This document shows, in pieces, positions 10,678 to 17,200 of a stretch of DNA of 64,000 nucleotides; position 1 is the stretch's first letter, and each line of letters opens with the position of its first letter. Below the pieces are notes generated by a model that worked only from the letters and a program-made list of their open reading frames with translations, was not told the origin of the DNA and searched no databases. The translations under genes and the position numbers were made by a program. The stretch comes from Macrostomum lignano. Lineage: Eukaryota. The stretch is from assembly GCA_002269645.1 (NCBI GenBank), contig NIVC01001411.1, forward strand, positions 62,001-126,000. Direction: 5' to 3'.

Positions 10678-11222
10678 ACAGACAGACAGACAGACAGACA
10701 GACAGACAGACAGACAGACAGACAGACAGACAGACAGACAGACAGACAGACAGACAGACAGACAGACAGACAGACAGACAGACAGACAGACAGACAGACA
10801 GACAGACAGACAGACAGACAGACAGACAGACAGACAGACAGACAGACAGACAGACAGACAGACAGACAGACAGACAGACAGACAGACAGACAGACAGACA
10901 GACAGACAGACAGACAGACAGACACTAAGACAGACAGACAGACAGACAGACACTAAGACAGACAGACAGACAGACAGACAGACAGACAGACAGACAGACA
11001 GACAGACAGACAGACAGACAGACAGACAGACAGACAGACAGACAGACAGACAGACAGACAGACAGACAGACAGACAGACAGACAGACAGACAGACAGACA
11101 GACAGACAGACAGACAGACAGACAGACAGACAGACAGACAGACAGACAGACAGACAGACAGACAGACAGACAGACAGACAGACAGACAGACAGACAGAAA
11201 GACAGACAGACAGACAGACAGA
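10678..11222. repeat. (GACA)n microsatellite in the predicted protocadherin 3'UTR
   Basis: About 135 copies with CACTAA interruptions at 10923 and 10951. Begins a few nt after the predicted stop on the minus strand. Confidence 0.98.
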
Positions 11223-11227
11223 GACTG

Positions 11228-14200: not shown

Positions 14201-17200
14201 TAGAAGAAAACGGAAAGAAGGAAGATGCGCAGAAGGGGAGGCGTAGTGTGAGGAGAGAACTCAAGGACAACTCTGATGACAATTTTAGTCAGCCAGTCTG
14301 CAACAGTTTTCCAAAAATGAGTTGAGGACTGAACAGCAGTGCATTGAATACAATCGGAAGCTCGAGAAGGGCGGATGGCAGAGCGGCTGGCTCATATCGC
14401 GAATTTGCTGAGGAAAATTGAATCCAGAGCGCACCGAACCTCTCGGGATAGAAAAAATATTGAGCACACACAAACACGTTGGTGTCTTCCTGTTGCCTCT
14501 GGTACATCGTGAATCGATCGCAGTGACCCCGGGTTGCCTGAGGGAAATCTCGGATATTCGATTTAGACTTGGAGAAAGCGAAACTCGGGTGAAATTTGGG
14601 TGATATAGTTTTTGCCATGTGTATTTGGGTCATACAGTTTGTGTCGCAGAGATTTCGGATCATAGAGATTTTGGGTCATAAGAGTTTCGGTCATAGAGTT
14701 TTTAGGTCATAGTGTCTTTGCGTCATGGAAAGTTTGGGTTATATAGAGTTTGGTCATAGAGAGTTTGGTTCACAGAGAGTTTTCGTCATAGAGAATCAGG
14801 TCATGGATACTTTAAACCTTGGAAGTTTGGGTCATAGACTGCATGGGTCAGAGTCTATTCAAGTCATCTGCACTTTTTGCGGCTACCTTAGTTAAAATTC
14901 GTAAAAGAACCGCTGATTTTTAGATTAACAAAATAATGCCATCTCAACTACTAACTCAGTAGAATTGCTGGAAAAGCATCGGAATAATTTTATTCCTGCT
15001 CTCACCGGCCACGCCGACGGCCTCCTCGCAGCTGCTGCGCGAGTGCCCCTCCTCCTCGGCCTGAGCTAGCGATGATGAGGCGGAGTGCTCCAGCGCCGGC
15101 TGCTGGCCTCCGGCTGCCCTGCGCGTCTGCTGCTGCCGCTGCACCGCCAGGCTGTCCTGCAGCGGGAGGGGAGGCAATGTGGGGCCAATCAACGCGCTTC
15201 AATTTGGAGCAGCCATCGATCTCTGCGACAAAATGGGCCGCTGATTCTGACCGGGACGGAGTTATTATTGATAACTGAAACAGAGCGCGGCTGTCAGCGG
15301 CCGCTCTGCCGATTTCATTCTGACGATGAGGGACTCCAACAGATCGAGCTCAAATTTTCAGCACTTTTAATGTGCGACAGTGACGAAATTATTTTCGATT
15401 GTAACTTCAGATTTCAGAGCAAAATTTAGCATGTCTGTATGCTTGTTTCAGTTAGGCTTCACACGTGTCTCTCTCGTCTGTCTGTCTGTCTGTCTGTCTT
15501 AGTGTCTGTCTGTCTGTCTGTCTTAGTGTCTGTCTGTCTGTCTGTCTGTCTGTCTGTCTGTCTGTCTGTATGTCTGTCTGTCTGTCTGTCTTAGTGTCTG
15601 TCTGTCTTAGCGTCTGTCTGTCTGTCTTAGTGTCTGTCTGTCTGTCTGTCTGTCTGTCTGTCTGTCTGTCTGTCTGTCTGTCTGTCTGTCTGTCTGTCTG
15701 TCTGCCTTAACAAATTGTCTTTGCTATGCACGCAACCAAACCGACATGATTGTGGATCCAGTGCGGCATTTTAATCAATACTAGCATTTAATTGGGCTGA
15801 TTATAAATGCATAATTAACGCAGGGCAATTATAATAAATTGCGCATTAGTGGGAGCTGTGCATTAAACAATTATCTTATCAGTGTGACAAAAACATTGCC
15901 TCACAGACCCCCCTGTTGAGTTTAAAACACACAGAAAATCATTAACTTCGACTTGAGTCTAACTGAGAGCTCCAGCTGCAGGTATTTTGATTGCTCACAG
16001 CTGGCGGATTTGTGGGGTGGGGGCTGTTTTATGACTCGGACTCAGCCGGGAAATGCACCCGCTAACCCTAAAGCCCCCATGCTGAGTGAGCTGTCCCCAC
16101 AGGCAGGCAGATATCAGCACCCTGCCACTGCTAATTATCCAAGTCACGTGGTGTGGCGGAATAGGGATAAACTCTGCTGGGAACTGGCTGACAGCAGCTT
16201 GAGAACTGGCAATGACGCTGCCAGTGACCCAGTGTAGGGATTTTGGAGCAGAGCTGTTTGAAATTTTGGTCGGATTGAAGGTCTAATTAAATGGAACCCC
16301 TCGTGTTTTCCATATTCATATTTTAACAAATCTTAGTTTGAAAATTCAATAATCCGAATATTAAAAACTTCATATTGTCAATATCGTGGAAAACTCAAGA
16401 TTATCATCAACTTTTAGCACCAAGCGGTTGCCATGGCTCCTATGGCTGGATTGAATCAAATAGTCCACCAGGCTTTTGTGCTTGATTCGCCGGCGCTTCC
16501 GGCTTGGAAACTGGAGGCAAAGGTTTCCTTAGTGAGCGGAAACTGTTTAAGAAAATTGGAGCTGGCTCAAGACGGATATCGGATAAAATGTTCGGCCGGG
16601 TTTAACCAATCTTTTGTGCAAAGTGAGGGGGAAATGAGGCCTGAGTGAGGGGGAAATGAGACCTGAGTGAGGACGGAAATGAGGCCTGAGTTAGAAGGGA
16701 AATGAGGCCTGAGTTAGAAGGGAAATGAGGCCTGAGTTAGAAGGGAAATGAGGCCTGAGTTAGAAGGGAAATGAGGCCTGAGTTAGAAGGGAAATGAGGC
16801 CTGAGTGAGGAGGGAAATGAGGCCTGAGTTAGAAGGGAAATGAGGCCTGAGTTAGAAGGGAAATGAGGCCTGAGTGAGGAGGGAAATGAGGCCTGAGTGA
16901 GGAAGGAAATGAGGCCTAAGTGAGGGGGAAATGAGGCCTGAGTGAGGACGGAAATGAGGCCTGAGTTAGAAGGGAAATGAGGCCTGAGTTAGAAGGGAAA
17001 TGAGGCCTGAGTTAGAAGGGAAATGAGGCCTGAGTTAGAAGGGAAATGAGGCCTGAGTTAGAAGGGAAATGAGGCCTGAGTGAGGAGGGAAATGAGGCCT
17101 GAGTTAGAAGGGAAATGAGGCCTGAGTTAGAAGGGAAATGAGGCCTGAGTGAGGAGGGAAATGAGGCCTGAGTGAGGAAGGAAATGAGGCCTAAGTGAGG

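What the first reader, a model, noticed from the sequence alone, without database searches (positions are those of the whole stretch)
10678..15704. Inverted (GACA)n/(TCTG)n arrays with the same rare interruption bracket the last two protocadherin exons
The 3'UTR array carries CACTAA interruptions and the intron 7 array carries the exact complement TTAGTG, while a third GACA array at 53496 has none. In the pre-mRNA the two arms could form a stem of up to about 230 bp enclosing exons 8-9 and the stop codon. This could affect terminal splicing, editing, nuclear retention or siRNA production. The shared interruption implies common origin or gene conversion.
Basis: partly seen in the sequence, partly recalled or inferred. 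Interest (0 to 1): 0.7.

Follow-up and report, generated by a model that had tools for sequence, protein, structure and literature searches.

The report
Inverted GACA microsatellites bracketing cadherin exons
Two long GACA microsatellites in opposite orientation, sharing a rare CTAA variant unit, really do bracket the last two exons of a flatworm (Macrostomum) protocadherin-like gene; they most likely reflect local repeat exchange in a very repeat-rich genome, not a proven RNA switch.

Summary
Array A (10677-11222) is (GACA)136.5 with two CTAA units. Array B (15466-15704) is (TGTC)~57 with five TTAG units. A third array at 53494-53552 is pure, but it is too short for that to mean anything.

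The window is Macrostomum (flatworm) DNA. An intact protocadherin-like gene lies on the minus strand. Array B sits in intron 7, 310 nt upstream of exon 8. Array A starts 5 nt after the stop codon, so any normal 3'UTR must enter it.

The arms could form a 230-bp duplex (-465 kcal/mol; longest perfect helix 94 bp). At most one CTAA unit can align in any register.

CTAA is not a generic GACA-array variant: 0 of 225 interrupting units in 120 environmental loci. The flanks show no homology, so shared descent or conversion of array material is the best reading.

How common CTAA is across the Macrostomum genome could not be tested. No function is shown. 33% of the window is tandem arrays. A second, longer inverted array pair brackets exon 7 of the same gene, so this geometry is not unique to the GACA arrays.

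Interest is modest.

The parts
10677..11222 (-). Array A. (GACA)136.5 on the + strand, so (UGUC)n in the mRNA. It starts 5 nt after the stop codon. It has two CTAA units (CACTAA at 10923 and 10951) and one GAAA unit.
15466..15704 (-). Array B. (TGTC)~57 on the + strand, so (GACA)n in the pre-mRNA. It lies in intron 7, 310 nt upstream of the exon 8 acceptor. It has five TTAG units (four as TGTCTTAGTGTC at 15495, 15519, 15587 and 15623, one as TTAGCG at about 15607) plus TACA and GACG variants.
15006..15156 (-). Exon 8 (151 nt) of the protocadherin-like gene. Acceptor CTGCAG|GAC, donor GCCG|GTGAGA.
   Evidence: 94% identical to P0001 residues 361-411
11228..11496 (-). Exon 9 coding part (269 nt including the stop TGA at 11230-11228). 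Acceptor TATCGCAG|GC.
   Evidence: P0007 (A0A1I8J4W4) spans the exon 8/9 junction at 91% identity
10577..10582 (-). First poly(A)-signal-like hexamer (AUUAAA) after the stop codon. It is 646 nt downstream of the stop and about 95 nt beyond the end of array A. A second lies at 10421-10426.
   Evidence: motif scan only; the real 3' end is unknown
19058..19272 (-). Exon 7 (215 nt). It is bracketed by the second inverted array pair.
18287..18779 (-). 13-mer array (CTCTGTCTCTCCC)x38 in intron 7, 279 nt downstream of the exon 7 donor. It is one arm of the second inverted pair.
19379..20450 (-). 13/30-mer array (GAGACAGAGGGGA...) in intron 6, 107 nt upstream of the exon 7 acceptor. It is the other arm of the second inverted pair. 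The two arms are 84% identical over 553 nt in inverted orientation, with a predicted 474-bp duplex at -984 kcal/mol.
53494..53552 (.). Third (GACA) array, 14.8 pure units, in the same orientation as array A. Its flanks are unrelated to those of A and B.
25271..26159 (-). Exon 6. It encodes the last cadherin repeats, the transmembrane segment and the start of the cytoplasmic tail. Donor AGAG|GTGAGG at 25271/25270.

Best explanation
**What it is.** These are two ordinary, probably neutral (GACA)n microsatellites in a tandem-repeat-saturated Macrostomum genome. One lies in intron 7 of a protocadherin-like gene and the other immediately after its stop codon.

**Why they share CTAA.** CTAA differs from GACA at three positions. 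I infer that array material passed from one array to the other. The likely routes are non-crossover gene conversion or template switching between the two inverted arrays 4.2 kb apart, or seeding of one array by an inverted piece of the other. A flank-inclusive duplication is not the cause.

**Likely history (inferred).** Array B is older and more degenerate (83% matches; CTAA in 5 of 57 units). Array A is long and nearly pure (97% matches). It carries one CTAA-(GACA)6-CTAA block in its middle that resembles B's CTAA-(GACA)5-CTAA. This fits a short patch that was transferred and then flanked by expansion.

**RNA consequence (inferred).** Both arrays should be transcribed, so the pre-mRNA could form a 230-bp duplex. 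I regard that as an incidental by-product, not a selected device.

**What is shown:** the anatomy, the gene model, the duplex energetics, the general rarity of CTAA, and the absence of flank homology.

**What is inferred:** the transfer mechanism, its direction, and neutrality.
For: - Arrays and their variant units.
- No similarity between the flanks of arrays A, B and C beyond chance 10-19-mers.
- CTAA absent among 225 interrupting units in 120 environmental GACA-array loci. Of those, 171 differ from GACA at one position, 47 at two and 7 at three. Fisher test of 7/11 against 0/225 gives p = 4e-11.
- No GACA-array hit for the CTAA 20-mer in viral contigs or in bacterial and archaeal genomes.
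- 33% of the window is tandem arrays, 38 in all.
- A second inverted array pair brackets exon 7, so the geometry recurs locally without any sign of purpose.
- Only one CTAA unit can align in any register, so the variant is not there to preserve pairing.
Against: - The frequency of CTAA-bearing GACA arrays elsewhere in the Macrostomum genome is unknown. If they are common, local exchange need not be invoked.
- The environmental mutation spectrum may not apply to this species.
- Both close same-family array pairs in the window are inverted and both bracket exons. That is only two observations (chance 0.25), but it is also what a functional design would look like.
- Neutrality is assumed, not tested. 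No paralogue or orthologue DNA could be fetched.
Confidence: 0.45

Rival explanations
1. CTAA-interrupted GACA arrays are a genome-wide family in Macrostomum. They might be spread by a mobile element or satellite lineage, or produced by a species-specific mutational route. In that case the two arrays share the variant only because many arrays do. Their inverted placement around exons 8-9 would be coincidence.
For: - Three GACA arrays lie in 64 kb, which suggests the motif is very abundant in this genome.
- Tandem repeats cover a third of the window.
- The third array is too short to count against this idea.
- Many unrelated minisatellites in the window contain AGACAG-like cores.
Against: - The flanks of arrays A, B and C share nothing, so no common element body is visible.
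- CTAA is absent from 225 interruptions in other organisms. A special species-specific cause would therefore be needed.
Confidence: 0.25
2. This is the reader's hypothesis: the two arms pair in the pre-mRNA and the stem has a function. It loops out exons 8-9 and so could modulate terminal splicing or 3'-end choice, attract ADAR editing or nuclear retention, or feed Dicer to make siRNAs.
For: - The predicted duplex has 230 bp at -465 kcal/mol, with perfect helices of 94 and 77 bp. Each arm alone is unstructured, at 0 and -10 kcal/mol.
- Array A cannot be avoided by a normal 3'UTR. The stop codon is 5 nt away and there is no poly(A) hexamer before 10582.
- Exon 7 is bracketed by a second inverted pair of 474 bp.
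- ADARs that suppress the dsRNA response exist in planarian flatworms (PMC8797187).
- Reverse-complementary matches promote back-splicing and exon skipping in C. elegans (PMC8330042).
Against: - There are no expression, editing, small-RNA or conservation data.
- Intron 7 may be spliced out before the 3'UTR, about 4.3 kb downstream, is transcribed.
- One arm lies in the terminal exon, so the circRNA mechanism cannot apply to this pair.
- If GACA arrays are abundant in both orientations, the 3'UTR array could pair in trans with many RNAs, so the cis partner is not special.
- The CTAA units do not align with each other, so they are not maintained for pairing.
Confidence: 0.12
3. The CTAA units in array A are an assembly or polishing artefact. 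They sit in the middle of a 546-bp pure array, more than 240 bp from unique sequence. Short reads from array B or from other arrays could have been mis-mapped there during polishing.
For: The two CTAA units are at units 62 and 69 of 137, the part of the array least anchorable by short reads. Published Macrostomum assemblies were built from noisy long reads plus Illumina and 454 data (PMC5730564). UniProt models from the earlier assembly show frame hops relative to the window.
Against: The spacing in A (6 GACA units between the CTAAs) matches no spacing in B, so a simple copy of B reads is unlikely. The sequencing technology behind this window is unknown. The rest of the gene reads cleanly in frame.
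Confidence: 0.08
4. The arrays act at the DNA level. (GACA)n read as (CAGA)n is a dense run of CAGAC Smad-binding-element-like motifs. The arrays might also bind another repeat-binding protein and act as enhancer or chromatin elements for the gene.
For: Only the sequence itself: (GACA)n contains CAGACA at every unit. The resemblance to the CAGA-box reporter element comes from my own knowledge and was not tested here.
Against: No evidence of any kind here. An abundant microsatellite motif is unlikely to be a specific regulator. Orientation and the CTAA variant would be irrelevant to this model.
Confidence: 0.03

Closest known systems
Reverse-complementary matches (inverted repeats such as IRAlus) in introns flanking exons, which promote back-splicing/circRNA formation and exon skipping
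   Same: Long complementary sequences lie on either side of exons in one pre-mRNA. The second pair found here (13-mer arrays in introns 6 and 7 around exon 7) has exactly this geometry.
   Different: In the GACA pair one arm is in the 3'UTR of the terminal exon. No downstream donor is available for back-splicing. The arms are microsatellites, not transposon copies. No circRNA or exon-skipping evidence exists.
Inverted-repeat Alu pairs within 3'UTRs (ADAR hyper-editing, nuclear retention)
   Same: A long, near-perfect intramolecular dsRNA that involves the 3'UTR.
   Different: Here only one arm is in the 3'UTR. The partner is intronic and is lost from the mature mRNA, so any effect would have to act before intron 7 is removed.
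Interrupted microsatellites whose variant units spread by slippage and gene conversion (variant-repeat mapping of mini- and microsatellites)
   Same: A rare variant unit is multiplied within an array and shared between related arrays. The older array is more degenerate and the young array is pure.
   Different: The sharing is between two arrays in inverted orientation that have no flank homology.
Bkm-type GATA/GACA simple repeats
   Same: Long GACA arrays are present, and a (TCTA)165 array (the GATA motif on the other strand) lies at 29856-30513 in the same gene.
   Different: GATA and GACA are not interspersed within one array. No link to sex chromosomes is possible to assess, and Macrostomum is hermaphroditic (from my own knowledge).
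Foldback-type transposons (terminal inverted repeats built of tandem sub-repeats); compare the anonymous metagenome contig L060
   Same: Two inverted arms made of tandem repeats lie a few kb apart. L060 shows inverted GACA-rich arms 3.2 kb apart that share an ordered pattern of variants.
   Different: The 'loop' here contains conserved host exons 8-9, which are also present in the paralogues' protein models. The arms share only the variant type, not an ordered pattern or flanks.

Membership tests
Exon-flanking intronic inverted repeats (circRNA/exon-skipping type) | Both complementary arms lie in introns, one upstream and one downstream of the looped exon(s) | tested here: not met
   For the GACA pair, array A lies after the stop codon in the terminal exon. 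The feature is met by the 13-mer pair around exon 7.
Exon-flanking intronic inverted repeats (circRNA/exon-skipping type) | Complementarity long enough to pair (tens of nt or more) | tested here: met
   230 bp at -465 kcal/mol, with a longest perfect helix of 94 bp.
Exon-flanking intronic inverted repeats (circRNA/exon-skipping type) | Back-splice or exon-skipping junctions observed in RNA | not testable with these tools
   No RNA-seq data are accessible.
3'UTR inverted-repeat dsRNA (IRAlu type) | Both arms lie within the mature 3'UTR | tested here: not met
   Array B is in intron 7.
Protocadherin / non-classical cadherin (the host gene) | Multiple extracellular cadherin repeats followed by a single TM segment | tested here: met
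   Pfam PF00028 hits on the exons at 30506-31048, 28260-28784, 27120-27836 and 25257-26159 (E values 1e-9 to 2e-24). The hydrophobic segment [25 protein letters not shown] follows.
Protocadherin / non-classical cadherin (the host gene) | Cytoplasmic tail lacking the classical cadherin catenin-binding domain | tested here: met
   No Pfam family is found on the translations of exons 7, 8 and 9. Named distant hits include protocadherin alpha-4 and Fat-type protocadherins.
Foldback-type transposon | Inverted terminal arms composed of tandem sub-repeats | tested here: met
Foldback-type transposon | A discrete mobile unit: the arms and interior are not part of a conserved host gene, and the element has target-site duplications | tested here: not met
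   The interior holds exons 8-9, which are spliced in frame to exon 7 and present in three M. lignano protein models. Target-site duplications were not examined.
Bkm (GATA/GACA) satellite | Interspersed GATA and GACA units in the same array | tested here: not met
   Arrays A and B contain no GATA units. The (TCTA)165 array is separate, at 29856-30513.

The most novel reading that the evidence does not exclude
In Macrostomum, inverted pairs of tandem arrays placed around exons could be a recurrent, selected way of building long intramolecular dsRNA in pre-mRNAs. This gene has two such pairs in a row, around exon 7 and around exons 8-9 plus the stop codon. They could set terminal-exon usage, produce a circular exon 7, or generate endogenous siRNAs that tune this cadherin. 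Conversion between the arms, visible as the shared CTAA unit, would keep them complementary.
Probability: 0.07. Interest if true: 0.75.

Novelty: new member of a known kind. Interest (0 to 1): 0.3.

Why it matters
If the stem formed and mattered, it would be a microsatellite-built dsRNA switch acting on the 3' end of a cell-adhesion gene. The host animal supports both RNAi and transgenesis, so the idea would be testable.

More realistically, the locus is a clean example of a rare complex variant unit marking sequence exchange between two inverted microsatellites that have no flank homology. It also shows how a repeat-saturated genome produces very long potential dsRNAs inside ordinary genes, which the cell must tolerate.

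Tried and rejected
1. **Inverted segmental duplication or shared transposon body.** Rejected. blastn of all flanks of arrays A, B and C finds only chance 10-19-mers.
2. **Inversion with one breakpoint inside an ancestral array.** Rejected. It would have inverted exons 8-9, yet they are collinear and in frame with exon 7 and with the paralogue models.
3. **Array A as the 3' tail of the neighbouring LINE (RT at 7586-8260).** Not supported. About 1 kb of other sequence, including a 17-mer minisatellite, separates them.
4. **CTAA as a general mutational hotspot product.** Rejected for organisms in general: 0 of 225.
5. **Peptide search for array ORFs carrying the interruption (SVLVSV).** It returned 33 degenerate CLSV-like proteins and none with the variant. 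This is uninformative, because HMMER bias filters remove pure arrays and no Macrostomum entries appeared.
6. **Fetching the paralogous locus through the M. lignano protein P0001.** It is not on record, so no paralogue DNA could be compared.
7. **Viral-contig hit for the CTAA 20-mer.** It is a coding (DTKT)n repeat, not a GACA array.
8. **Rfam and tRNA scans of the window.** Nothing found.
9. **Literature searches for GACA repeats in Macrostomum.** Nothing relevant.
10. **An apparent premature stop after the TM segment (25254-25256).** It is explained by a good donor site, AGAG|GTGAGG, at 25271. The UniProt model reads through the intron there.

Full report
**Observation**

TRF reports (GACA)136.5 at 10677-11222 (97% matches) and (TGTC)59.5 at 15466-15704 (83% matches). 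Parsing by unit gives the following.

- Array A is 62 GACA, CTAA, 6 GACA, CTAA, 60 GACA, GAAA, 5 GACA.
- Array B, read as its reverse complement, is 18 GACA, CTAA, 3 GACA, GACG, CTAA, 3 GACA, CTAA, 5 GACA, TACA, 10 GACA, CTAA, 5 GACA, CTAA, 5 GACA.

The 12-mer GACACTAAGACA occurs exactly six times in the window, all in these arrays. At up to one mismatch there are 12 matches against 0.28 expected. The inverted-repeat finder gives 232-nt arms that are 92-94% complementary.

The third array (53494-53552) is 14.8 pure units. At the CTAA densities of A and B, a 15-unit array would lack CTAA with probability 0.80 and 0.25. It is therefore not a meaningful control.

**What the locus is**

The best protein match of the upstream cadherin exon is a Macrostomum lignano protein, A0A1I8JQN3. 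The tail exons match two further M. lignano models: A0A1I8J4W4 at 91% identity, and A0A1I8F4T5. The window is therefore Macrostomum DNA, either one of several homeologous copies or a close relative.

Pfam Cadherin domains lie on the minus-strand exons at 30506-31048, 28260-28784, 27120-27836 and 25257-26159. The last of these ends in a transmembrane segment.

A spliced model with GT-AG introns is fully in frame:

| Feature | Coordinates (minus strand) | Length |
|---|---|---|
| Exon 6 | ends at 25271 | – |
| Intron 6 | 25270-19273 | 5998 nt |
| Exon 7 | 19272-19058 | 215 nt |
| Intron 7 | 19057-15157 | 3901 nt |
| Exon 8 | 15156-15006 | 151 nt |
| Intron 8 | 15005-11497 | 3509 nt |
| Exon 9 CDS | 11496-11228 (stop TGA 11230-11228) | 269 nt |

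A0A1I8J4W4 spans the exon 8/9 junction in this frame. The tail has no Pfam domain, which fits a non-classical, protocadherin-like cadherin.

**Position of the arrays in the transcript**

Array B is in intron 7, 310 nt upstream of exon 8, and reads (GACA)n in the pre-mRNA. Array A begins 5 nt after the stop codon and reads (UGUC)n.

There is no poly(A)-like hexamer before or inside array A. The first AUUAAA is at 10582, 646 nt after the stop. A normal 3'UTR must therefore run through the array. This is inference; the real 3' end is unknown.

**Pairing potential**

RNAduplex gives 230 bp at -465 kcal/mol, with perfect helices of 94 and 77 bp. Each arm alone folds at 0 and -10 kcal/mol.

The CTAA units are 7 units apart in A and 5, 4, 17 and 6 units apart in B. 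At most one can align in any register. The shared variant therefore does not serve the pairing.

**Is the shared CTAA more than chance?**

CTAA differs from GACA at three positions. Those loci contain 225 interrupting units:

| Differences from GACA | Units |
|---|---|
| One position | 171 |
| Two positions | 47 |
| Three positions | 7 |
| CTAA specifically | 0 |

. Against 7 CTAA among 11 non-GACA units here, Fisher p = 4e-11. Copies within one array are not independent events, so that p-value is overstated. On the more conservative count, two independent origins of the same variant are still unlikely, roughly 1e-3 by my estimate.

The exact 20-mer has no GACA-array hit in viral contigs and none in bacterial or archaeal genomes. 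The single viral hit is a coding DTKT repeat.

The flanks of A, B and C share nothing. That excludes a flank-inclusive inverted duplication and a shared transposon body. An inversion that split one array is excluded because exons 8-9 are collinear with the rest of the gene.

The remaining readings are these:
- transfer of array material between the two arrays, by conversion or template switching;
- a Macrostomum-wide CTAA-bearing array family;
- a polishing artefact in the unanchorable middle of array A.

The second reading could not be tested. No tool gave access to Macrostomum genomic DNA.

**Context that lowers the surprise**

Thirty-eight tandem arrays cover 33% of the window. [quoted passage not shown]

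Comparing all arrays with each other revealed a second and stronger inverted pair in the same gene. (CTCTGTCTCTCCC)38 at 18287-18779 and its complement at 19379-20450 are 84% identical over 553 nt. The predicted duplex is 474 bp at -984 kcal/mol. These arms lie in introns 7 and 6 and bracket exon 7, which is the classical circRNA or exon-skipping geometry.

Both close same-family pairs in the window are thus inverted and both flank exons. With two observations this is not significant (chance 0.25). It fits a local mutational habit of making inverted array copies, and it fits function equally well.

**Verdict**

- The anatomy is real, and the common-origin-or-conversion inference is reasonable.
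- The functional RNA-stem idea is possible but wholly untested.
  - It is weakened by the likely removal of intron 7 before the 3'UTR is made.
  - It is weakened by the terminal-exon position of one arm, so the circRNA route is closed to this pair.
  - It is weakened by the probable abundance of GACA arrays able to pair in trans.
- Flatworms do have ADARs that suppress the dsRNA response (PMC8797187).
- Complementary intronic matches do drive back-splicing and exon skipping in another invertebrate (PMC8330042). The idea is therefore not absurd.
- I rate the finding as a new member of a known kind and of modest interest. The decisive tests are a genome-wide census of array variants, a comparison of homeologues and sister species, and re-analysis of existing 3'-end, total-RNA and small-RNA data.

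Noticed in passing
window 18287-18779 and 19379-20450: A second inverted pair of tandem arrays (13-mer CTCTGTCTCTCCC and its complement). The arms are 84% identical over 553 nt, with a predicted 474-bp duplex at -984 kcal/mol. They lie in introns 7 and 6 and bracket exon 7 (19272-19058), the classical circRNA/exon-skipping geometry.
   Followed up: partly
window 1-64000: 38 tandem arrays (TRF score at least 100, periods 4-268) cover 33% of the window. Most introns of the cadherin gene carry one or more. Many unrelated units contain AGACAG/GAGACA-like cores.
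   Followed up: partly
window 29856-30513: A (TCTA)165 array (the GATA motif on the other strand), 98% pure, abuts the cadherin exon segment 30506-31048. Together with the GACA arrays this gives the gene both Bkm-type motifs, but in separate arrays.
   Followed up: no
window 15495-15634 and 10921-10960: In one of the three reading frames the TTAG unit is fully synonymous within the (VCLS)n translation (CTG to CTT, TCT to AGT). The 425-aa ORF at 10363-11640 (-) runs through both interruptions for this reason. I judge it a coincidence, because successive interruptions fall in different phases.
   Followed up: yes
window 25205-25271: UniProt model A0A1I8JQN3 reads through the exon 6 donor into the intron ([21 protein letters not shown] matches 25267-25205 at 100%). 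Elsewhere it hops between frames relative to the window. This suggests indel errors or mis-modelling in the older M. lignano gene set. In the window the gene is intact if the donor at 25271 is used.
   Followed up: yes
window 7586-9630 (+): A non-LTR retrotransposon fragment: Pfam RVT_1 at 7586-8260, followed by further ORFs with a Cys-rich C-terminal end. It is antisense to the cadherin gene and lies 1.6-3.6 kb downstream of it. A 17-mer minisatellite (9696-10184) containing GACAGTAAGACA follows it.
   Followed up: partly
window 46076-48956 (-), 50106-51173 (-), 63027-63470 (-): Other genes in the window: an angiotensin-converting-enzyme-like M2 peptidase (Pfam E = 8e-125), an apparently intronless rhodopsin-type GPCR, and an RRM-domain exon.
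   Followed up: partly
L060 2000-2140 (+) and 5270-5400 (-): An anonymous metagenome contig (WLWD01006260.1) carries two GACA-rich degenerate arrays in inverted orientation, about 3.2 kb apart, that share the same ordered pattern of variant units. It is an independent example of inverted copies of a GACA array, possibly transposon termini or an inverted duplication.
   Followed up: no
L121 1720-1850: A viral contig (IMGVR_UViG_3300017748_000568) contains a 12-nt coding repeat GACACTAAGACA (DTKT)n next to an (AQADAK)n repeat. It matches the CTAA 20-mer by chance and is unrelated to microsatellites.
   Followed up: yes
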